A stretch of 64,000 nucleotides of DNA, from positions 62,001 through 126,000 of IMG/VR virus record IMGVR_UViG_3300033153_007973. The stretch is one strand, 5' to 3'. This document shows, in pieces, positions 1 to 8,681 of this stretch; within the stretch, counting starts at the first letter, position 1, and every line of letters starts with the position of its first letter. The notes under the pieces are model-generated. The model ran no database searches and was not told the origin of the DNA. It was given only the letters and a program-made list of their open reading frames with translations. The position numbers and the translations under genes are program-made.

Positions 1-14
1 AGAGGACTAGAGAT

Positions 15-278
15 ATGGGCAATGGACCTTCATTTATTGTTAAACATGCTAGAGCCGCCGATGATGCTGTTAATGTCGAGGTCATATGTCCACATTGTAG
101 TAAGATTCAATATGATATGATCGTCAGAGGGATTGATGTTGGAAGATGCTGTATGCATTGCATGAGTTCAGCTACTATTAGAGCAAAGGATGTGGAACAC
201 GCCATCAATGATTTGTTAGAACAAGATAAGCCCATGAATATGAGTGTGTTGCGTGATGGGCTTATACCGGAGGAATAA
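15..278 (+). CDS. small Zn-ribbon-like hypothetical protein with C-terminal LRDGLIP motif
   Basis: GAGGA SD; CPHC...CMHC; stop overlaps next ATG (TAATG). Confidence 0.75.
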   Translation: MGNGPSFIVKHARAADDAVNVEVICPHCSKIQYDMIVRGIDVGRCCMHCMSSATIRAKDVEHAINDLLEQDKPMNMSVLRDGLIPEE

Positions 279-733
279 TGTCACAAGCAGATGCACTAGA
301 AGCATTAATGAGGAGAAGAAATATGGCATTGACACCAGCACCACGAGCTATATCACGTAGTGAAGCAGCATACGAACGCCCACCAATGATTGCACAAAAT
401 GCTTGGCTCCGGGTTCCAAATGGAAACGTAAAGCCGCCGGAGCCAAAAATAGATGGCCCTGATATCAGTACGAAAACGATTATCCTAGATATGATCTCTA
501 TGGGTGTCGCTGTGCTGCGTCGGCTTTGGACCAAGAAGAAGGTATCATATGGTAATGTCGCGGCTGATGTACTGAAGACGCGTAAAAAAGAAGATGAGAA
601 GCTGGCGATTCTGGTCAGTCCAGTTATCAGACCGGGGATTATTACACTGGATAAACTTCCAAAGAAGAGACCGCGACCGGTTCCAACTATAGATGGCATT
701 GGCATAATGAGAGGAGATATCGATGGCGACTAA
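278..733 (+). CDS. hypothetical protein
   Basis: GGAGG SD, coupled to upstream ORF; internal IRPGII motif. Confidence 0.7.
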   Translation: MSQADALEALMRRRNMALTPAPRAISRSEAAYERPPMIAQNAWLRVPNGNVKPPEPKIDGPDISTKTIILDMISMGVAVLRRLWTKKKVSYGNVAADVLKTRKKEDEKLAILVSPVIRPGIITLDKLPKKRPRPVPTIDGIGIMRGDIDGD

Positions 734-1028
734 CGTAGGAGAGAATGATCCGCGTTTCCTTCAAGATATGCTCGATATACCGACGAATGAGCCAGCATGG
801 CAGCTGGATAGTCGGGGCAATATCATAGGTATAGTTAATTGTCCGCGGGCTGTGCATTATCAGCTGGATGAGAATGGTGTGATAGATTTTAATCATACGG
901 TTAATGTGCCGCCAGCGCTAGGAGATATATTCTCTGCTATGAATAAAGAGAATGAAGAAAAACCGGTAGTACCTGATGTTGCGCAGATAGTGCGTTCTGG
1001 ACTTATTCCTGATGATACCATTCGGTAG
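723..1028 (+). CDS. hypothetical protein with C-terminal VRSGLIP motif
   Basis: AGGAG SD; overlaps end of upstream ORF. Confidence 0.75.
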   Translation: MATNVGENDPRFLQDMLDIPTNEPAWQLDSRGNIIGIVNCPRAVHYQLDENGVIDFNHTVNVPPALGDIFSAMNKENEEKPVVPDVAQIVRSGLIPDDTIR

Positions 1029-1041
1029 TATAGGAGGAGAC

Positions 1042-1407
1042 ATGGGAATAGTAGTTTGCGGGCCAATGTGCATATATCGATCTGGACGTAAGTGTTCACA
1101 TGAGGATGCGCCGGATACTTTCCTCAGTAAATGGTTCCCGAAATGGTTCTCGCCCAGATGCACTGAGTGGGGTAAATTACAGGAAGACTGCGACATGCAT
1201 GAGCTTCCCCCGCGACCACCCATGCGTGGAAGAGCGATGCGAACTGAGAGGCCGGCTAATCTAGATGGTATCTCCATGCAGTTACATACGACAATGGACC
1301 CAGATGTATTCTTTGGTAAGAGGACAATGGGAGGAAAACAGTTGCAGCCAGACTCCACCAAGGTAATCAGGAAGGGACTTATCCCGGAGGATAAAAATGG
1401 CAAGTAA
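1042..1407 (+). CDS. Cys-rich hypothetical protein with C-terminal IRKGLIP motif
   Basis: AGGAGG SD before ATG 1042, preferred over the track start 1012. Confidence 0.75.
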   Translation: MGIVVCGPMCIYRSGRKCSHEDAPDTFLSKWFPKWFSPRCTEWGKLQEDCDMHELPPRPPMRGRAMRTERPANLDGISMQLHTTMDPDVFFGKRTMGGKQLQPDSTKVIRKGLIPEDKNGK

Positions 1408-1684
1408 AATATATTTCATGAGCGATGCACATATCGGAAATGGAGATATGATAGACAATCTGAAACTATATACTAGAGATCCAAGTAAAGAGATCTCGCT
1501 GCTTTGGGACAAGATCGCAGACCAGAAAAAGGTCTCTAGTGATCCAAATGACATGGTACTGACATATTCAGTGGGTAAGTTCGGGAAGGGGCTGAGAATA
1601 GAGGAGAAGAAGGAGAGACCGGTGATCCCTGAAATCTCGAAGACCATCAGAGATGGGATCATCCCGTTCAGCAAACTGACATAA
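1397..1684 (+). CDS. hypothetical protein with C-terminal IRDGIIP motif
   Basis: GGAGG SD; overlapping coupling. Confidence 0.75.
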   Translation: MASKIYFMSDAHIGNGDMIDNLKLYTRDPSKEISLLWDKIADQKKVSSDPNDMVLTYSVGKFGKGLRIEEKKERPVIPEISKTIRDGIIPFSKLT

Positions 1685-2286
1685 TGCCTATATCTAAGTC
1701 ACATTTTCTTGGTATTCTGAGAGAACGCCGGGACCGGCGCGAGCAAGAGAAGAGACTGGCCACACATGATGATGTATCAAAAGAGAAGAAGAGGAAGAAG
1801 CTTGCCAGGATCTCAATGACCGATGAGGTATTTATGAGATTCCTCACTGGAGAATACTACATAGATCTAGATGATGATATTGTCATAGAAAGAATGTGGA
1901 TTGAGAACCAATATGTGGAGGCCAAAATAAATATCGTTATATCAGGGGAGAGTCTGAAAGTAGGTTATACTACGCCAAATGCAAGTATCCCGGAGTTCTC
2001 TATGGATATACAGACTTCGAATTCCAAGCCAATCTCGCGCGGACAGGTTGACGTCACCGAATGTCCTGGTATAATGGGAGTTAGAGCGAAAACCAGAGGT
2101 GAGATCAAGATAGTCGAGAGACTCCTTGATCTCGATAAGAATGCGGTTGATGCAGATAGTGATATGATAAGTATGGCTGCTCAGCGTCTTATTGGTGATA
2201 TTCCTAATATATCTAACGAGGTTGCTGAGATGATCATCAGAGAGCTTTTGGAAGGAGAAGAAAGAACGACACATGATGTGGTATAA
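1684..2286 (+). CDS. hypothetical protein
   Basis: 200-aa ORF coupled by TAATG. Confidence 0.7.
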   Translation: MPISKSHFLGILRERRDRREQEKRLATHDDVSKEKKRKKLARISMTDEVFMRFLTGEYYIDLDDDIVIERMWIENQYVEAKINIVISGESLKVGYTTPNASIPEFSMDIQTSNSKPISRGQVDVTECPGIMGVRAKTRGEIKIVERLLDLDKNAVDADSDMISMAAQRLIGDIPNISNEVAEMIIRELLEGEERTTHDVV

Positions 2287-2807: not shown

Positions 2808-3323
2808 ATGATACCAACAGAGAGTGCCTGGGACCTGTATTACCGCGTATTCAATGACAATGATGATGTCTATGTGATCACTGATAGTGATGAAGCATAC
2901 TGGGGTAAGGCACACGCCACCCAGACAGGACTTCTGCTATCTCATCCTAACGTAGTGGACAGGTTCTTAGATTGGGATGATATTACGTTTATGGCACATG
3001 ATGGATTCCCTGTCCGCAAGCTGATGGGAGCTGATGGATCAAAGGCGATCGAGAAGACGAATACCAATACGATCGAGGCAGGTATCAGGAAGCTCCTGAC
3101 TAAGAACCCAAGCATCACAGATGGTCCGCGGGTGAAGCAGGCAGTATTCGGAGATCCGTTCCTGGTCGAGAATGTCGAAGCTACTCTGATGAATACATAT
3201 TATCCCGGGAACCACATCTGGGAACCAGAACACGAGGAGCTGATCATCCTCAAGGCGCCGGATGGTGCAGTTGGTCTTCTGTATGAACTGAACCGTATAT
3301 ATCATTTTGATGCGCGGGAGTAG
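2808..3323 (+). CDS. hypothetical protein
   Basis: AGGAG SD; 171 aa; stop codon inside tRNA-Gly. Confidence 0.8.
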   Translation: MIPTESAWDLYYRVFNDNDDVYVITDSDEAYWGKAHATQTGLLLSHPNVVDRFLDWDDITFMAHDGFPVRKLMGADGSKAIEKTNTNTIEAGIRKLLTKNPSITDGPRVKQAVFGDPFLVENVEATLMNTYYPGNHIWEPEHEELIILKAPDGAVGLLYELNRIYHFDARE

Positions 3324-3385
3324 CTCAGGGGTAGAGCGCCTGCTTGCCATGCAGGAGGTCGAGGGTTCGAATCCCTTTTCCCGCT
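3314..3385 (+). tRNA. tRNA-Gly(GCC)
   Basis: cloverleaf; CCTGC-TTGCCAT-GCAGG. Confidence 0.95.
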
Positions 3386-3397
3386 CAGGAGGAAAGA

Positions 3398-3484
3398 ATG
3401 AGAAACGAAGAACAGGAAATACTGAAGATCCTTGGAATTCTCATTTTGACAGGAATTCTTCTTGCAATTTTCTTCTCTTTCTGA
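3398..3484 (+). CDS. 28-aa single-TM peptide MRNEEQEILKILGILILTGILLAIFFSF
   Basis: AGGAGG SD; manual translation. Confidence 0.6.
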   Translation: MRNEEQEILKILGILILTGILLAIFFSF

Positions 3485-3499
3485 TAATATAGATTATAT

Positions 3500-3571
3500 G
3501 CGGATAAGGTGTTAATGGCTGCACGGGAGCCTTCCAAGCTTTCGGATCGGGTTCGATTCCCGATATCCGCT
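3500..3571 (+). tRNA. tRNA-Gly(TCC)
   Basis: cloverleaf; loop CTTCCAA. Confidence 0.93.
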
Positions 3572-3578
3572 CATGAAT

Positions 3579-3652
3579 GGCTGCGTAGCGTAGCGGTCTA
3601 ACGCACCGCCCTGTCAAGGCGGGGATCGACGGTTCGAATCCGTTCGTGGCCG
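3579..3652 (+). tRNA. tRNA-Asp(GTC)
   Basis: cloverleaf; loop CTGTCAA; G73. Confidence 0.95.
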
Positions 3653-3654
3653 AT

Positions 3655-3728
3655 GCACCCTTAGCTCAGCTGGCTAGAGCAAGCGGTCGATAACCGCTAG
3701 GTCCCTGGTTCGAGTCCAGGAGGGTGCA
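3655..3728 (+). tRNA. tRNA-Ile(GAT), C33
   Basis: cloverleaf; AGCGG-TCGATAA-CCGCT. Confidence 0.92.
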
Positions 3729-3729
3729 C

Positions 3730-3954
3730 ATGATTGAGATATTAACTATAGTGGCTGCAATCGCTGAGATTGCTGGTATCTATCTTCTGGGTCAGAAAAA
3801 GAAGCTCGGGTTTATTCTGGGTTCAATTTCTGGTGTGCTCTGGGTCGCCTATACTGTGATAACCGGGAATGCGATCGGTCTTGTAATCGTATGTTCCGTA
3901 ACCTTTGTTCTTAATGGACGAGGATTCTTCAAGTGGAGGAAAGAAGAGACATGA
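3730..3954 (+). CDS. PnuC-like three-helix membrane protein
   Basis: three hydrophobic segments; GIYLLGQKKKLGF...LW...GFFKW pattern resembles half of PnuC. Confidence 0.55.
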   Translation: MIEILTIVAAIAEIAGIYLLGQKKKLGFILGSISGVLWVAYTVITGNAIGLVIVCSVTFVLNGRGFFKWRKEET

Positions 3955-4604
3955 ATACATTCATGAAGATTATCAACAAGATATTTAAGAAGAATCCTGG
4001 AAGAAATAAGTGGATGTTGAAAGCTGCTCAGAATGGTGATGTTCTCCTAATTGGTTGCGATAGATTTACTACCAACCTAACATCTAAGCTTCTTCACGAG
4101 GGAATTATCAAGTTTACTGGTGGAAAGTGGTCTCATTCTGGAATCATCAAGATCATAAGAGGTGAGACCAATGTCATAGAAGCAACCAGTGATGGAGTCA
4201 TAACCACTCCATTATGGAGATATATGACATCTAATGGTATATCATATAACATGAAGATTAAGAGAGTCCAAGAAGAACACATCTCACAAGCAAAGAAAGC
4301 GGCATGCAATGCCAAGAAACACAAGGGCAAAAAGTATGATTATGTAGCAGTGATCAATTTGGCCGGTTATATTCTCTATACGAAACAGAAGAGAAAAGGT
4401 CTATCATTGCCGAATGCAGAAGACATCTTCGGCAGAAACACTCCCGATCTCTTTATTTGTTCAGAGCTTGTTCATGCTGCATATAGAGAAGCTGGAATAT
4501 GTCTGTGTGATTTCGTAGAGGATCCAGATGAACAAGAAGCACTGGTAACTCCTCGAGATCTGGACGAATCCAAATATCTACACGATGTGAGAAAACCTAA
4601 ATAA
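3951..4604 (+). CDS. permuted papain-like NlpC/P60 (YiiX/YaeF-type) cysteine hydrolase
   Basis: GDVLL, WSHSGI, IEAT..GV, KKYDY, FICSELV, VTPRDL with His before Cys. Confidence 0.85.
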   Translation: MNTFMKIINKIFKKNPGRNKWMLKAAQNGDVLLIGCDRFTTNLTSKLLHEGIIKFTGGKWSHSGIIKIIRGETNVIEATSDGVITTPLWRYMTSNGISYNMKIKRVQEEHISQAKKAACNAKKHKGKKYDYVAVINLAGYILYTKQKRKGLSLPNAEDIFGRNTPDLFICSELVHAAYREAGICLCDFVEDPDEQEALVTPRDLDESKYLHDVRKPK

Positions 4605-4608
4605 ATCG

Positions 4609-4637
4609 TTGACAAGAAGAAACTTGTGCTTTATAAT
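4609..4637 (+). promoter_or_regulatory. sigma70-type promoter
   Basis: TTGACA-17-TATAAT. Confidence 0.85.
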
Positions 4638-4778
4638 GACACATAGATTAGAGAAAGAAACCAACCAACGCCCGCGGAGGACTATAACATGAAACTATCA
4701 CCTACCTCATTAGAAATTCCCCTTAGTAAGCTAGCCGCGCGGGCATCATTTAGTTATCAGCATATATCTGAACTTCTT

Positions 4779-4850
4779 GGCTCCGTAGTCTAGCGGCTAG
4801 GACACCAGGTTTTCATCCTGGGGGTGGGAGTTCGATTCTCCCCGGAGCTA
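4779..4850 (+). tRNA. tRNA-Glu(TTC)
   Basis: cloverleaf; CCAGG-TTTTCAT-CCTGG. Confidence 0.93.
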
Positions 4851-4854
4851 ATAT

Positions 4855-4926
4855 GTCAGGGGTAACTCAATGGTAGAGTGCACGACTGTGACTCGTGTTA
4901 CGGGGGTTCGATTCCCCTTCCTTGAC
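4855..4926 (+). tRNA. tRNA-His(GTG)
   Basis: cloverleaf with encoded G-1:C73; loop CTGTGAC. Confidence 0.93.
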
Positions 4927-4939
4927 CAAAGGAGATTGA

Positions 4940-5488
4940 ATGGCTAATGTCAGAGATAGCATAGGTAAGATGAGCAAAGTACATTTAATAGATGTCATTG
5001 CTGATGTTGCGATTTATCTCTCATTCCAGCAACATACCCGGAATAAGGATCTGGCGCATGTGGAAAAACTAGAAAAATGCTTGACAACTCTGGAATCATT
5101 GAAGAACTGGAGGACGAAGAAATCTTTGGAAGGGAAGATGAAAACCAAGGAACCTTTAGCATTAACCAATGATATGTTGTTTGATCCAGTAGCTCAAGAG
5201 GAGGTAAATAAGTCTGGCCGTGGTGTGAAGATTAAGAAATCGCCACCAAAGAAACAGGTCAAAAAGAAAACAAAGAGAACAAATGCAACACATACTCATG
5301 AGTTGACACAGGATGAAATAGAAGCACTATTATCAGCTATATCAGATAATCCACCGATAATAGGGTCTGATTCTCTGGAGGAACTCTCGATAAGAGATCG
5401 ACCCCGTCGGCGTCAATCATTTTATAGCCGAACACGGAGCAGACATATACGAATACGAATGGACAGAGAAAGGAAATCACCAGAATAA
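4940..5488 (+). CDS. hypothetical protein with FliM-N-like peptide
   Basis: AAGGAG SD; ELTQDEIEALLSAIS. Confidence 0.75.
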   Translation: MANVRDSIGKMSKVHLIDVIADVAIYLSFQQHTRNKDLAHVEKLEKCLTTLESLKNWRTKKSLEGKMKTKEPLALTNDMLFDPVAQEEVNKSGRGVKIKKSPPKKQVKKKTKRTNATHTHELTQDEIEALLSAISDNPPIIGSDSLEELSIRDRPRRRQSFYSRTRSRHIRIRMDRERKSPE

Positions 5489-5490
5489 TT

Positions 5491-5575
5491 GGAGAGGTGC
5501 GAGAGCGGTTGAATCGGGCTCCCTGCTAAGGAGTTGGGTGTAACAGCCCCGGGGGTTCGAATCCCTCCCTCTCCG
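5491..5575 (+). tRNA. tRNA-Ser(GCT)
   Basis: cloverleaf with long variable arm; G73. Confidence 0.95.
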
Positions 5576-5599
5576 AACTAACTTAAAAAGGAGAAGTAG

Positions 5600-5875
5600 A
5601 TGCCAGACGAAACAAAGATTGTAATACCAAAAAAGGTTCCAAGTAAGAAAGAAGTAGAGGTCATGCAACATGGTGCACAGTGGATCAATGAAGGTAATGA
5701 AATAACATGTCCAGAATGCATGTCGCGTAGTCCAAGGATCAGATGTACTGTAGATAAAGGATTTGATCTCTCTACGGCAAAGGATCCAAATATTGGAAGA
5801 GCAACACATAAGTATATTGCAAAATGTCAATGTACTTTATGTAGTTGCGCATTCGAGATCAGACGCAGCGAGTAG
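5600..5875 (+). CDS. Zn-ribbon hypothetical protein
   Basis: AAGGAG SD; CPEC...CTLC. Confidence 0.75.
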   Translation: MPDETKIVIPKKVPSKKEVEVMQHGAQWINEGNEITCPECMSRSPRIRCTVDKGFDLSTAKDPNIGRATHKYIAKCQCTLCSCAFEIRRSE

Positions 5876-5881
5876 CTAGAC

Positions 5882-5969
5882 GGAGCGGTATCCAAGTCCG
5901 GTTGAAGGAGTCGCACTGTAAATGCGATGCCACGTGCTAAACTCGATGGTTCGAATCCATCCCGCTCCA
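5882..5969 (+). tRNA. tRNA-Tyr(GTA)
   Basis: cloverleaf; TCGCA-CTGTAAA-TGCGA. Confidence 0.92.
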
Positions 5970-5983
5970 ATTGGGTAATGAAT

Positions 5984-6131
5984 CCGGTAATTTTGGTTAC
6001 CGATATTAACGGAAACCGGTAACATGTGTTACCGGAATACCAATACCCGATAAGGTATAATATGTTGGTAGTTATACCCGAAAGGGATGATTTACTGATA
6101 AGATATTAGTAATTATACCCGAACGGGTATA
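5984..6131. repeat. array of six short palindromes
   Basis: 2x CCGGTAA-N6-TTACCG, 3x ATACCCGA..GG(TAT), 1x TTACTGATA-AGA-TATTAGTAA. Confidence 0.8.
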
Positions 6132-6132
6132 T

Positions 6133-6214
6133 GGAGAGGTGGACAACGGTTGTCGAACGGTTTTGAAAACCGTCGCTGGTAAAACAGTTGCAGGTTCGAA
6201 TCCTGTCCTCTCCG
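6133..6214 (+). tRNA. tRNA-Ser(TGA)
   Basis: ACGGT-TTTGAAA-ACCGT; variable arm; G73. Confidence 0.9.
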
Positions 6215-6215
6215 C

Positions 6216-6431
6216 ATGTGTGACAGAGCAGAAGATTGGGACCTAATGATCCGCGCTGAAGCAAAATGCACGGGCGCTAATGTTCACAGGATTCATACCC
6301 TTACATGCTTGCTGGATGGTGCATGGTCGCTCAAACAGGAGAATAGGGAAGATGCTAAAGAATGGCGGAAAGAACTAGTACAATTTGTTTATGGACGCAC
6401 TCGTGCTGGAATGGTAGACAGGTCTGGTTGA
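6216..6431 (+). CDS. possible hypothetical protein
   Basis: fills spacer but has no SD and ends inside tRNA-Leu. Confidence 0.35.
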   Translation: MCDRAEDWDLMIRAEAKCTGANVHRIHTLTCLLDGAWSLKQENREDAKEWRKELVQFVYGRTRAGMVDRSG

Positions 6432-6480
6432 GAACCAGGTGTCAGTAATGGGCGTGTGAGTTCGACTCTCACCGGGTGCA
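6397..6480 (+). tRNA. tRNA-Leu(GAG)
   Basis: cloverleaf with variable arm. Confidence 0.94.
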
Positions 6481-6485
6481 TATGC

Positions 6486-6556
6486 ACACCTATAGCTCAG
6501 GGGCAGAGCAGGAGACCTTTAATCTTTTGACGGTGGTTCGATTCCACCTAGGTGTA
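6486..6556 (+). tRNA. tRNA-Lys(TTT), C33
   Basis: GGAGA-CCTTTAA-TCTTT. Confidence 0.88.
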
Positions 6557-6580
6557 AACCTCTCGAGTTCGAGAGGTTTA
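6555..6580. repeat. perfect 12-bp inverted repeat between the two tRNA-Lys genes
   Basis: TAAACCTCTCGA-GT-TCGAGAGGTTTA. Confidence 0.8.
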
Positions 6581-6583
6581 GAA

Positions 6584-6657
6584 GGACGTGTAACTCAACT
6601 AGGTAGAGTAGCGGGCCCTTAACCCGCAAGTTGTGGGTTCGATTCCCACCGCGTTCA
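6584..6657 (+). tRNA. tRNA-Lys(CTT), C33
   Basis: GCGGG-CCCTTAA-CCCGC. Confidence 0.92.
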
Positions 6658-6658
6658 G

Positions 6659-6760
6659 ATGTTCACGAAGGCTCAACAAAGCCCGACGACACCCGATGCT
6701 AGATCAGGCTGAGGGACGCATGCAGAGGCCGAGTTGTTCAGAGCTGGATCTTTGTGACAT
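6659..6760 (+). ncRNA. putative rod-like structured RNA
   Basis: nested helices TCACGAAG/CTTTGTGA, GCTC/GAGC, AACAA/TTGTT. Confidence 0.45.
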
Positions 6761-6768
6761 GTACAAAA

Positions 6769-6847
6769 GAAGCCGTAGTGTAGAGGCAGCACACCGCCGG
6801 GTAACAACTGTGCGGAGGGGTTATGGTTCAATACCTAGCCGGCTTCC
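6769..6847 (+). tRNA. atypical tRNA with extended anticodon arm (loop GTAACAA)
   Basis: GAAGCCG/CGGCTTC; D arm GTGT/GCAC; bulged T arm GG-TTCAATA-CC. Confidence 0.55.
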
Positions 6848-6852
6848 AAGTG

Positions 6853-6932
6853 ACAGTGTCGGGGCGAGGTCGCGACCACTTCGTGGTCCTCGATAGAAAG
6901 GGTGTGCACACCGCCTTTAGCCCCCGTACTGT
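6853..6932 (+). ncRNA. putative three-way-junction RNA
   Basis: closing ACAGTG-T-CGGGG/CCCCG-TACTGT plus two internal hairpins. Confidence 0.5.
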
Positions 6933-6937
6933 TTTAT

Positions 6938-7010
6938 GGGCTTGTAGCTCTAATGGGAGAGCGCCTCGCTTGCACCGAGGATGTTGCTGGTTCGAATCCA
7001 GTCAGGTCCA
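6938..7010 (+). tRNA. tRNA-Ala(TGC)
   Basis: cloverleaf; G3:U70. Confidence 0.95.
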
Positions 7011-7015
7011 CAATT

Positions 7016-7090
7016 AGCGGGATTGCCTAATTGGCTAAGGCACCAGTCTCTGACACTGGTTTATTGAAGGTTCGAATCCTTCTCCCGCCG
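7016..7090 (+). tRNA. tRNA-Gln(CTG)
   Basis: CCAGT-CTCTGAC-ACTGG; unpaired 1:72; G73. Confidence 0.92.
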
Positions 7091-7106
7091 GAATTATAGG
7101 AGTGAT

Positions 7107-7181
7107 ATGACAGAATTGATGGTAATAGGGTTGATTCTTTTGTGGGGTTTTGGTTTATGGCTCATGGATAAACATTGCTAG
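7107..7181 (+). CDS. 24-aa single-TM peptide MTELMVIGLILLWGFGLWLMDKHC
   Basis: AGGAG SD; manual translation. Confidence 0.55.
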   Translation: MTELMVIGLILLWGFGLWLMDKHC

Positions 7182-7228
7182 TTTGCGTCGAATATTTCCG
7201 TAATCGACGCAGATTTTGCGTCGAATAT

Positions 7229-7302
7229 GCGCTCATAGACCAACGGCAGAGTCAAGGGCCTTAAAAGCCCTCAAGTGATGGGTTCGAATCCCTCTGGGCG
7301 CA
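7229..7302 (+). tRNA. tRNA with TAA (Leu) anticodon and short variable loop
   Basis: AGGGC-CTTAAAA-GCCCT; A73; no long V arm. Confidence 0.85.
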
Positions 7303-7312
7303 AAGGAGAACA

Positions 7313-7384
7313 ATGGAGATTCTAATCATAGTAGTGATAGTCTTAGCAATTTGTGCTATCGATGTGATAGTAAAAAAGAAGTAG
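7313..7384 (+). CDS. 23-aa single-TM peptide MEILIIVVIVLAICAIDVIVKKK
   Basis: AAGGAG SD; stop shares its G with G1 of tRNA-Phe. Confidence 0.55.
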   Translation: MEILIIVVIVLAICAIDVIVKKK

Positions 7385-7455
7385 CCGAGATAGCTCAATG
7401 GGCAGAGCAGGGGATTGAAGATCCTCAAGCGGAGGTCCGAATCCTCCTCTTGGCA
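7384..7455 (+). tRNA. tRNA-Phe(GAA)
   Basis: cloverleaf; T loop TCCGAAT (C55). Confidence 0.9.
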
Positions 7456-7456
7456 A

Positions 7457-7810
7457 ATGAATCGACGAGATAAAATTGTATCGTTCTTACGTAAGCCATA
7501 TCGGAAGGTAAATCCATATGGTCGTATGATGTGTAAGTGTGGTAATTTACAGGTGCACAGTCTTAGGTGGTGCCCTGATTGCGGTGGCGAATACGCCGAT
7601 GATCCATGCAATATGACATTCTGTGATGTTATTATGAGACAGGTAACTGAGAATCCTAGATATCAAAAAGAAGATGGTTATGTTGGATACCTATGGTGGG
7701 AAGCACTACTCAGTAGGTCTATCGGAGTTGGACCAATACCTGCCGCTGAGCTTAAAGATCTGCATGAACAGACATTAAAGGAGGTGCGACATGAAAGATC
7801 TCTAGATTAA
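7457..7810 (+). CDS. Zn-ribbon hypothetical protein
   Basis: first ATG after tRNA-Phe; CKCG...CPDCG. Confidence 0.65.
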   Translation: MNRRDKIVSFLRKPYRKVNPYGRMMCKCGNLQVHSLRWCPDCGGEYADDPCNMTFCDVIMRQVTENPRYQKEDGYVGYLWWEALLSRSIGVGPIPAAELKDLHEQTLKEVRHERSLD

Positions 7811-7825
7811 TCAAGGAGGTTAGAC

Positions 7826-8083
7826 ATGTCACGATCATATAAGAAGAATCCAGGCTACATAGATGGTCCACATGGTGATCATAAACGGTGGGCAAACAAG
7901 GTGGTGCGTAGAACAAAAGATGTCCCAGATGGTTGTCTATATAAGAAACATTATCCACAGTGGGACATCTGCGACTTCAAGTGTATCTACTATAGTAACA
8001 AAGAATGGTTGCGTTACTCCGCTCCAAATAGGACAGAGTTTGGATCAGAATATGACGAACCATATAGAGCAAGAATGAAATAG
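7826..8083 (+). CDS. basic hypothetical protein (MSRSYKK...ANKxVR...WDICD type)
   Basis: AAGGAGG SD; pattern recalled from phage hypothetical proteins. Confidence 0.8.
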   Translation: MSRSYKKNPGYIDGPHGDHKRWANKVVRRTKDVPDGCLYKKHYPQWDICDFKCIYYSNKEWLRYSAPNRTEFGSEYDEPYRARMK

Positions 8084-8088
8084 ATAGA

Positions 8089-8168
8089 GCACTCGTGGTG
8101 GAACTGGCAGACACGCTAGACTTAGAATCTAGTGCGAAAGCATGAGGGTTCGACTCCCTCCGAGTGCA
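8089..8168 (+). tRNA. tRNA-Leu(TAG)
   Basis: cloverleaf with variable arm. Confidence 0.95.
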
Positions 8169-8171
8169 CAG

Positions 8172-8252
8172 GCACTTGTGGCGAAATGGCATACGCGCAC
8201 GGTTCAGAGCCGTGTCCCATTCGGGTTGGTGGTTCGAGTCCACTCAGGTGCA
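8172..8252 (+). tRNA. tRNA-Leu(CAG)
   Basis: cloverleaf with variable arm. Confidence 0.94.
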
Positions 8253-8302
8253 AATATGTATTTTAATTTACGAATACGTTAATTCGAATACATAATTGCC
8301 TT

Positions 8303-8418
8303 GGGCGACATTAATTCAATGGCCAGAGCGAGAGGCACGCGTAGTATGAGGCCTGAGTGAGTTATAGAAATGGGACAGCTTGTCCCTATGTGCGGGTTCG
8401 AATCCCGCATGTCGCCCA
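8303..8418 (+). ncRNA. tRNA-like RNA with two hairpins replacing the anticodon arm
   Basis: GGGCGACAT/ATGTCGCCC; GCGGG-TTCGAAT-CCCGC; D-like TTCAATGGCCAGAG. Confidence 0.65.
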
Positions 8419-8421
8419 CTT

Positions 8422-8494
8422 GCATCCATAGCTCAGTTGGCAGAGCACCTGTTTTACACGCAGGGTGTCGGAGGTTCGATTCCTTCTGGATGCA
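8422..8494 (+). tRNA. tRNA-Val(TAC)
   Basis: cloverleaf; loop TTTACAC. Confidence 0.95.
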
Positions 8495-8499
8495 CAGAT

Positions 8500-8583
8500 G
8501 TGCTGGTTTCCCTCCCGGCGCCCAATATTGTGTTTATGGACTGGGGAGAGTCGTTATGGAGCTCTCCCCTTAGTCCTGCAAAT
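8500..8583 (+). repeat. two-hairpin element, copy 1
   Basis: GTGCTGG/CCGGCGC then GGACTGGGGAGAG/CTCTCCCC..AGTCC-TGCA. Confidence 0.7.
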
Positions 8584-8656
8584 GGTCTTGTAGCTCAATC
8601 GGTAGAGCACCATACTCATAATGTGAGGGTTGGTGGTTCGAGTCCACCCAAGACCA
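8584..8656 (+). tRNA. tRNA-CAT (elongator Met or lysidine Ile2)
   Basis: cloverleaf; loop CTCATAA. Confidence 0.92.
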
Positions 8657-8681
8657 ATAGCTAGCCGATTCCAAGGACGCC

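What the first reader, a model, noticed from the sequence alone, without database searches (positions are those of the whole stretch)
15..1684. Five coupled, otherwise dissimilar small proteins share a C-terminal (I/V/L)RxG(L/I)IP tag
Seen: ORF ends KPMNMSVLRDGLIPEE*, KPVVPDVAQIVRSGLIPDDTIR*, LQPDSTKVIRKGLIPEDKNGK*, RPVIPEISKTIRDGIIPFSKLT*, plus a weaker internal SPVIRPGIIT in 278..733. Codons differ at synonymous sites (CGT/AGG/AGA; GGG/GGA; CCG/CCT), so the peptide rather than the DNA looks conserved. N-termini differ (two are Cys-rich). Inference: a common docking, packaging, degron or processing signal on a family of variable effectors. The array may continue left of the window.
Basis: partly seen in the sequence, partly recalled or inferred. 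Interest (0 to 1): 0.72.

Follow-up and report, generated by a model that had tools for sequence, protein, structure and literature searches.

The report
Shared tail peptide on phage proteins
Nine neighbouring small genes of an uncultured 234-kb phage encode mostly unrelated proteins that all carry the same 14-residue peptide near their C-terminus, most likely a docking handle for one common partner that is still unidentified.

Summary
The array has nine consecutive, overlapping + strand genes (genome 60591-63684). Four lie left of the window. Each carries P-x5-[VI]-[RK]-x-G-[LI]-I-[PTS] near the C-terminus. A tag-only profile scores these nine at 15-24 bits and nothing else in the 234-kb genome above 5.5 bits. 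Codon positions 1 and 2 are fixed and wobble positions are free. The spacing to the next start codon ranges from -14 to +76 nt. So the peptide is under selection, not a DNA repeat or a ribosome-binding site.

Four bodies (A, B, C, E) are zinc-ribbon paralogs. Five (D, F, G, H, I) have no detectable similarity to anything. AlphaFold2 puts B's tag on a disordered tail behind a confident fold.

An exhaustive search of 1.84 billion proteins found one outside homolog, on a 739-bp scaffold, and it keeps the tag core. The nearest phages and five Clostridia genomes lack the tag.

My reading is a short linear docking motif on a diversifying set of small phage proteins. The partner is unknown. Candidates are the phage's own ClpC-like unfoldase plus ClpP, or the prohead, as with the T4 internal-protein targeting peptide. 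The one complex prediction gave no answer.

The parts
1..278 (+). Gene E (87 aa from the ATG at window 15; an alternative GTG start lies 33 nt left of the window). It has a zinc-ribbon body and is the fifth gene of the array. Genes A-D lie left of the window at genome 60591-61079, 61060-61356, 61346-61669 and 61669-61977 (L001 91-579, 560-856, 846-1169, 1169-1477).
   Evidence: paralogy with A/B/C
228..269 (+). Tag copy in E (KPMNMSVLRDGLIP); 2 residues follow it
   Evidence: 23.8 bits
278..733 (+). Gene F (151 aa, net charge +10, orphan body)
608..646 (+). Tag copy in F (…SPVIRPGIIT); it is internal, with 28 residues following
   Evidence: 18 bits
723..1028 (+). Gene G (101 aa, orphan body)
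969..1010 (+). Tag copy in G (VPDVAQIVRSGLIP)
1012..1407 (+). Gene H (131 aa, or 121 aa from a later start; Cys-rich orphan body)
1345..1386 (+). Tag copy in H (QPDSTKVIRKGLIP). It is the closest match to B's tag at the DNA level (36 nt, 78% identity).
1397..1684 (+). Gene I (95 aa, orphan body), the last tagged gene
1625..1666 (+). Tag copy in I (IPEISKTIRDGIIP)
1684..2286 (+). Gene J (200 aa). It is untagged and its start overlaps I's stop codon. It is an orphan. It was tested as a candidate receptor and the test gave no answer.

Best explanation
The nine genes form one tightly overlapping operon. Each product has three parts: a small variable body (about 70-150 aa), a charged flexible linker, and a conserved 14-residue peptide of the form P-[DES]-x4-hydrophobic-[VIL]-[RK]-x-G-[LI]-I-[PTS]. 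I read the peptide as a short linear docking motif. It would tether nine different bodies to one common partner, while the bodies diversify by duplication and divergence or replacement. The motif tolerates 1 to 28 variable residues after it, so it behaves as a docking handle and not as a signal that needs a free C-terminus. The tag is confined to this phage lineage, so the partner is more likely phage-encoded than a universal host hub. My first choice is the phage's own ClpC/ClpA-like unfoldase with ClpP. In that case the tagged proteins would be SspB-style adaptors or scheduled substrates. My second choice is the prohead, with the tag acting as a packaging signal like the T4 internal-protein targeting peptide. 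What is shown: the motif, its restriction to this array, peptide-level selection, the disordered tail in B, and the modular bodies. What is inferred: docking itself, and any partner.
For: The tag is restricted to nine consecutive genes and absent from the rest of the genome. Conservation has codon periodicity with free wobble positions, and the spacing to the next start codon varies from -14 to +76 nt. Only 35% of codons match at identical residues, and no nine-member DNA repeat family exists. The bodies of D, F, G, H and I are unrelated by a body-only HMM (E > 50) and by Smith-Waterman z < 2, while A, B, C and E are paralogs with z 3.5-13.7. AlphaFold2 models B's body at pLDDT 83-91 and its tail (residues 83-98, which carry the tag) at pLDDT < 50 with no secondary structure. 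The linkers are rich in charged and polar residues, and neighbouring genes overlap by 1-20 nt. The outside homolog P0010 keeps the core (VEVVKDGII) at about 39% overall identity to B. The phage encodes a true ClpP at 256 bits. It also encodes a roughly 730-aa class-I Clp unfoldase with a GMGFG ClpP-docking-type loop and an N-domain of no known family. Two precedents are documented. SspB is a folded domain plus a disordered tail ending in a short segment that binds the ClpX N-domain. T-even internal proteins are diverse apart from a conserved capsid targeting sequence. Jumbo phages with ClpP, ClpS or ClpA/ClpX are on record.
Against: No partner was identified. The only complex prediction (unfoldase N-domain + J + G's tail) gave no answer because no chain folded. 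Comparative depth is minimal: one outside homolog with the tag and one B ortholog in which the tag is disrupted or frameshifted, both on a 739-bp scaffold. Four of the nine are plain paralogs. The other five could be paralogs diverged beyond detection, and the single-sequence model of D was too poor to decide. The Clp genes lie more than 49 kb away on the other strand. Expression timing is unknown, because consensus sigma70-type promoters occur throughout the genome.
Confidence: 0.55

Rival explanations
1. Specific version 1: the tag tethers the proteins to the phage's own ClpC-like unfoldase/ClpP. They would act either as adaptors that deliver different host targets or as substrates removed on schedule.
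For: The phage has ClpP plus an unfoldase with an IGF-type loop and an orphan N-domain. B has the SspB-like layout of body, disordered linker and terminal peptide. Jumbo phages are known to carry Clp adaptors.
Against: The complex prediction gave no answer. There is no sequence relation to SspB, ClpS or MecA. The genes are not linked. The residues after the tag are variable and often acidic, unlike ssrA-type C-degrons.
Confidence: 0.2
2. Specific version 2: the tag is a virion-packaging signal. It would load the small proteins into the prohead for ejection into the next host, like the T4 internal-protein capsid targeting sequence.
For: Precedent exists: T-even internal proteins are a diverse set that share only the targeting sequence. 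The proteins are small. The array opens the + strand block that also holds terminase, portal, major head protein and sheath.
Against: The tag is C-terminal, not N-terminal. No conserved protease-site-like residue follows it. The array is separated from the head genes by about 17 kb and a tRNA bank. No T4-type prohead protease was found, although that search's control was silent.
Confidence: 0.2
3. The array is an ordinary, fast-diverging paralog family. The tail is the slowest-evolving remnant and serves the fold, or self- or hetero-oligomerisation, and not a shared external partner.
For: A, B, C and E are demonstrable paralogs. All members are of similar size and are tandem and overlapping. 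The low-confidence model of D has five strands followed by a tail, like B.
Against: Five bodies show no similarity to any other. B's tail is modelled as disordered and detached from the fold. In C and F the tag sits in a different context, with 19 and 28 residues following it.
Confidence: 0.15
4. The tag is a cis-acting nascent peptide. It would pause the ribosome near each gene's end to tune termination and reinitiation in the overlapping operon. The I-R-x-G…P core recalls the SecM arrest motif (recalled from memory, not tested).
For: Selection acts at the amino-acid level. In seven of nine genes the tag ends 1-6 codons before the stop. In most of those genes the next start lies within a ribosome footprint of the tag.
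Against: In C and F the tag is 19 and 28 codons from the stop, and 23-76 nt from the next start depending on the start call. The terminal Pro is replaced by Thr or Ser in three members. No precedent for such an array is known to me.
Confidence: 0.04
5. The conservation lies at the nucleic-acid level, as a repeat, promoter, ribosome-binding site or RNA structure.
For: Gene starts overlap some tags. Short partial DNA repeats exist between some tags, for example B and H share 36 nt at 78% identity.
Against: Wobble positions are scrambled and the spacing to the next start is variable. Codon identity at identical residues is 35%. No DNA family spans the nine copies.
Confidence: 0.01

Closest known systems
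Capsid targeting sequence of T-even phage internal proteins (IPI, IPII, IPIII and their polymorphic relatives)
   Same: Both are clusters of small, highly diverse phage proteins that share only a short terminal peptide, which addresses them to one destination (PMC3012670).
   Different: The T4 signal is N-terminal and directs the proteins into the scaffolding core. Here the peptide is C-terminal, has no sequence likeness to it, and presence in the virion is untested.
SspB-type adaptor tethering peptide (the C-terminal segment that binds the ClpX N-domain)
   Same: Both have a folded body, a disordered linker and a short terminal peptide (bioRxiv 10.1101/2022.11.06.515074). The phage encodes its own Clp unfoldase and ClpP.
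   Different: There is no homology to SspB. Here nine different bodies share one tail. Binding to any unfoldase is not shown (one search gave no answer).
C-terminal degrons of the ssrA type
   Same: Both are short conserved peptides at or near the C-terminus.
   Different: In this array, 1-28 variable and often acidic residues follow the motif. That does not fit a signal read at the free C-terminus.
Small phage zinc-ribbon proteins (Lar-like and other Zn_ribbon families)
   Same: A, B, C and E have CxxC…CxxC bodies, modelled as a beta-sheet plus helix.
   Different: All matches fall below the curated thresholds. There is no significant structural neighbour, with a best Foldseek E-value of 0.13. 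None of those families is described with this tail.

Membership tests
T4-type internal proteins with a capsid targeting sequence | The short conserved targeting peptide is at the N-terminus | tested here: not met
   The conserved peptide lies 1-28 residues from the C-terminus, and the N-termini share nothing.
T4-type internal proteins with a capsid targeting sequence | The proteins are present in the virion and processed by the prohead protease | not testable with these tools
   No virion proteome exists. PF03420 gave no hit, but the control genomes were silent too.
SspB-like adaptors | A folded domain followed by a disordered tail that ends in a short docking segment | tested here: met
   In the AlphaFold2 model of B, the body has pLDDT 83-91 and the tail (residues 83-98, with the tag) has pLDDT < 50 and no secondary structure. 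This was shown only for B.
SspB-like adaptors | Sequence membership in the SspB family, or another known Clp adaptor family | tested here: not met
   No Pfam, PHROG or NCBIfam match.
SspB-like adaptors | The tail binds the N-domain of the unfoldase | tested here: inconclusive
   The complex prediction returned no answer because no chain folded.
ssrA-type C-terminal degron | The motif occupies the extreme C-terminus | tested here: not met
   The motif is followed by 1, 2, 19, 3, 2, 28, 5, 6 and 5 residues of variable sequence.
Zinc-ribbon proteins | Two CxxC knuckles, and a match to a curated zinc-ribbon model above threshold | tested here: inconclusive
   A, B, C and E have four Cys in CxxC pairs and weak hits (best 22.7 bits against a cut-off of 34.4). 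D, F, G and I lack the pattern.
DNA repeat or regulatory element | Conservation at the nucleotide level, independent of reading frame | tested here: not met
   Conservation is codon-periodic with free third positions, and no nine-copy DNA family exists.

The most novel reading that the evidence does not exclude
The array is a virus-encoded set of interchangeable substrate adaptors. Each variable body would seize a different host protein, for example a defence factor. The common C-terminal peptide would plug them all into the phage's own ClpC-like unfoldase/ClpP. Together that would be a modular targeted-degradation system in a bacteriophage.
Probability: 0.1. Interest if true: 0.85.

Novelty: new variant of a known kind. 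Interest (0 to 1): 0.55.

Why it matters
Short addressing peptides shared by otherwise unrelated phage proteins are rare, and they are useful. The T4 targeting sequence became a tool for loading foreign proteins into capsids, and adaptor tethers explain how proteases choose their substrates. This phage offers a new 14-residue handle with nine natural cargo variants, in a phage that also carries its own unfoldase and protease. Finding the receptor would reveal either a new packaging route or a new form of phage-directed proteolysis. It would also assign a role to nine orphan genes at once. The bodies attached to the handle are candidates for host-takeover or anti-defence functions.

Tried and rejected
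- **Family libraries.** Pfam, PHROGs and NCBIfam on all ten operon proteins gave only sub-threshold zinc-ribbon hits.
- **Wider protein searches.** A word-indexed search of 5.8 billion clusters with two profiles returned only this phage's own proteins plus P0010.
- **Contig collections.** IMG/VR and JGI metagenome scans with protein I and with the B-subfamily profile found no relatives. A six-member profile was too divergent for the scan to accept.
- **Second sample.** The contig from the second sample differs by 1 SNP, so it says nothing about selection.
- **Complex prediction.** Unfoldase N-domain + J + G's tail returned no verdict because the chains did not fold. This is not evidence either way.
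- **Protein atlas.** Searches with G, H and J gave no usable hit.
- **Fold search.** Foldseek of the B model against PDB gave nothing significant.
- **Single-sequence fold of D.** The model had pLDDT 45 and was unusable for testing cryptic paralogy.
- **Tag profile against PDB sequences.** The one hit is a chance-level 9-residue likeness to ParD helix 2, at E = 2.
- **Host-motif mimicry.** The tag profile found nothing in five Clostridia genomes.
- **Nearest phage relatives.** The tag profile found nothing in Moorella phage MTATph1 or in the nearest IMG/VR relative. The positive control on this phage's own genome found all nine copies.
- **Early-operon idea.** I dropped it. A sigma70-like promoter precedes gene A, but perfect consensus promoters also sit inside the structural module.
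- **Recent tag transfer between B and H.** Codon identity was 7 of 10 against a 35% background, which is not significant after 36 comparisons.
- **Clamp-binding idea.** The phage has no clamp match, and the tag lacks the conserved Gln of the bacterial clamp-binding motif (recalled from memory).
- **Sequencing runs.** None was listed, so no expression data were available.

Full report
**Setting.** The window is bases 62001-126000 of a 234,008-bp IMG/VR virus record with 114-bp terminal repeats. It is a myovirus-type jumbo phage with terminase, portal, major head protein and sheath genes. It has no close cultured relative. The best terminase match is 32% identity to Moorella phage MTATph1, and the match to Bacillus phage 0305phi8-36 is 25%. 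Its ClpP is 60-66% identical to ClpP of gut and rumen Clostridia, which is a weak hint at a Bacillota host. Genes run on the minus strand up to about 59.7 kb, on the plus strand from 60.6 to 183 kb, and then on the minus strand again.

**The observation.** The five ORFs and their endings are exactly as described. The strict motif occurs six times in the whole genome, always in consecutive + strand ORFs. A slightly looser reading shows nine consecutive genes, which I label A to I, at genome 60591-63684. Four of them lie left of the window. Gene A is the first gene after the divergent intergenic region, and no tRNA lies upstream of it. The public record's gene caller called the same nine genes. 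The genes overlap by 1-20 nt. The exception is D to E, which is +37 or -11 nt depending on the start chosen. The tenth gene, J, is coupled to I but carries no tag.

**Statistics.** The loose pattern gives 10 hits in 178,238 six-frame residues against 1.15 expected. Nine are the array and one is an antisense hit at chance level. A 14-residue profile, P-x5-[VI]-[RK]-x-G-[LI]-I-[PTS], scores the nine copies at 15-24 bits, and the next best site in the genome scores 5.5 bits.

**Peptide or nucleic acid.** In the aligned codons, first and second positions of the core are almost invariant and third positions are scrambled. The distance from the motif to the next start codon runs from -14 to +76 nt. 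At identical residues the codons match in only 35% of cases. The DNA repeat finder recovers only partial two- or three-member families, the best being B with H at 36 nt and 78% identity. Selection therefore acts on the peptide, and the copies are old.

**Are the proteins paralogs?** Partly.
- With the tails removed, A, B, C and E are related. Smith-Waterman z-scores are 3.5-13.7, and a body-only HMM gives E of 1e-18 or better. They share a CxxC…CxxC zinc-ribbon body.
- D, F, G, H and I match nothing. z is below 2 for every pair, and the HMM finds none of them even at E = 50 among about 1,075 ORFs.
- No curated family covers any of them.
- By eye, D and G can be lined up with the ribbon, but no statistic supports that. 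A single-sequence AlphaFold2 model of D was too poor to use, at pLDDT 45.

**Structure.** AlphaFold2 on B with the six-member alignment gives a confident five-strand sheet plus helix for residues 14-80 (pLDDT 83-91). The tail, residues 83-98 with the tag, has pLDDT below 50 and no secondary structure. The 18 residues before each tag are 44-72% charged or polar residues, Gly and Pro. This is the layout of a short linear motif on a flexible tail. The fold has no significant neighbour in the PDB.

**Distribution.**
- Exhaustive HMMER over 1.84 billion representatives returned the nine proteins and one outsider, P0010, at E = 4e-4.
- P0010 lies on a 739-bp ENA scaffold. It is a zinc-ribbon homolog, 39% identical to B, and it ends with the tag core VEVVKDGII followed by four residues.
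- The next gene on that scaffold is a 53%-identical ortholog of B. Its tag reads normally up to the Lys and then diverges at a run of six G. That is either a six-residue insertion or a one-base assembly error.
- No other relative exists in 5.8 billion clusters, in IMG/VR or in JGI metagenomes.
- The tag profile finds nothing in Moorella phage MTATph1, in the nearest IMG/VR relative or in five Clostridia genomes. The same search finds all nine copies in the phage itself.

**Candidate partners.**
- The phage encodes a genuine ClpP at 256 bits.
- It also encodes a class-I Clp unfoldase of about 730 aa that spans the terminal-repeat junction. The unfoldase has AAA_lid_9, AAA_2 (205 bits) and ClpB_D2-small domains, two Walker A motifs and a GMGFG loop of the kind that docks on ClpP. 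Its N-domain, about 125 aa, matches no family.
- Jumbo phages with ClpP, ClpS or ClpA/ClpX have been catalogued (PMC7824862).
- SspB is the textbook example of a folded domain plus a disordered tail ending in a short segment that binds an unfoldase N-domain.
- Nothing folded and the tool gave no verdict, so this question stays open.

**What I dropped.** A sigma70-like promoter with an extended -10 lies about 80 nt upstream of A. However, nine perfect TTGACA-17-TATAAT sites lie on the coding strand all over the genome, including the structural block. The promoter therefore says nothing about timing. No sequencing run was listed for the array.

**Verdict.**
- The best reading is a lineage-specific docking peptide shared by a diversifying operon of small phage proteins (confidence 0.55).
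- The partner is unresolved. I put about 0.2 on the phage Clp machine and about 0.2 on the prohead.
- An ordinary paralog family with a conserved structural tail remains possible (0.15). A cis-acting nascent peptide is a long shot (0.04). A nucleic-acid element is excluded.
- The kind of thing, a shared addressing peptide on polymorphic small phage proteins, is known. The motif, its C-terminal position and its context are new.

Noticed in passing
window 3314-8657: A bank of 20 tRNA genes, all on the + strand, starts 1 kb downstream of the array. A Peptidase_C92 (permuted papain-like amidase) gene sits among the tRNAs at window 3933-4604.
   Followed up: partly
whole genome; in the window at 4609, 16306, 22720, 42183: Nine perfect sigma70 consensus promoters (TTGACA-17-TATAAT) occur, every one on the local coding strand and several directly after a stop codon in the structural module. 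About 0.03 are expected by chance. The phage appears to rely on host-type promoters even for head and tail genes, although it encodes its own RNA polymerase-like protein.
   Followed up: partly
genome 608-4234 (-), outside the window (L008): A 1208-aa protein carries both Rpb2 domain 6 and Rpb1 domain 2 matches. That indicates a fused beta/beta-prime-type RNA polymerase.
   Followed up: no
genome 10896-11486 (-), and 232242-233894 continuing at 1-540 (-): The phage encodes ClpP and a ClpC/A-like unfoldase. The unfoldase gene is split by the linearisation point of the record, so the 114-bp terminal repeat may be an assembly overlap of a circular or permuted genome and not a physical end.
   Followed up: partly
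genome 9351-14023 (-), L008: A cluster of ATP-dependent DNA ligase, NAD synthase and RtcB RNA ligase genes lies next to ClpP. This may be an RNA and NAD repair set relevant to host defence by tRNA cleavage or NAD depletion.
   Followed up: no
window 43749-69871: Three consecutive giant ORFs of 2570, 2274 and 3795 aa lie in the structural block, with no annotation attempted.
   Followed up: no
L006 640-700: In the B ortholog on the ENA scaffold, the tag region breaks at a run of six G. Removing one G would give a short tag-like ending in another frame. It could be an assembly error or a real degenerate copy.
   Followed up: partly
window 1397-1450: The N-terminus of protein I (…YFMSDAHIGNGD…) looks by eye like motif I of calcineurin-type metallophosphoesterases. 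No profile hit supports this.
   Followed up: no
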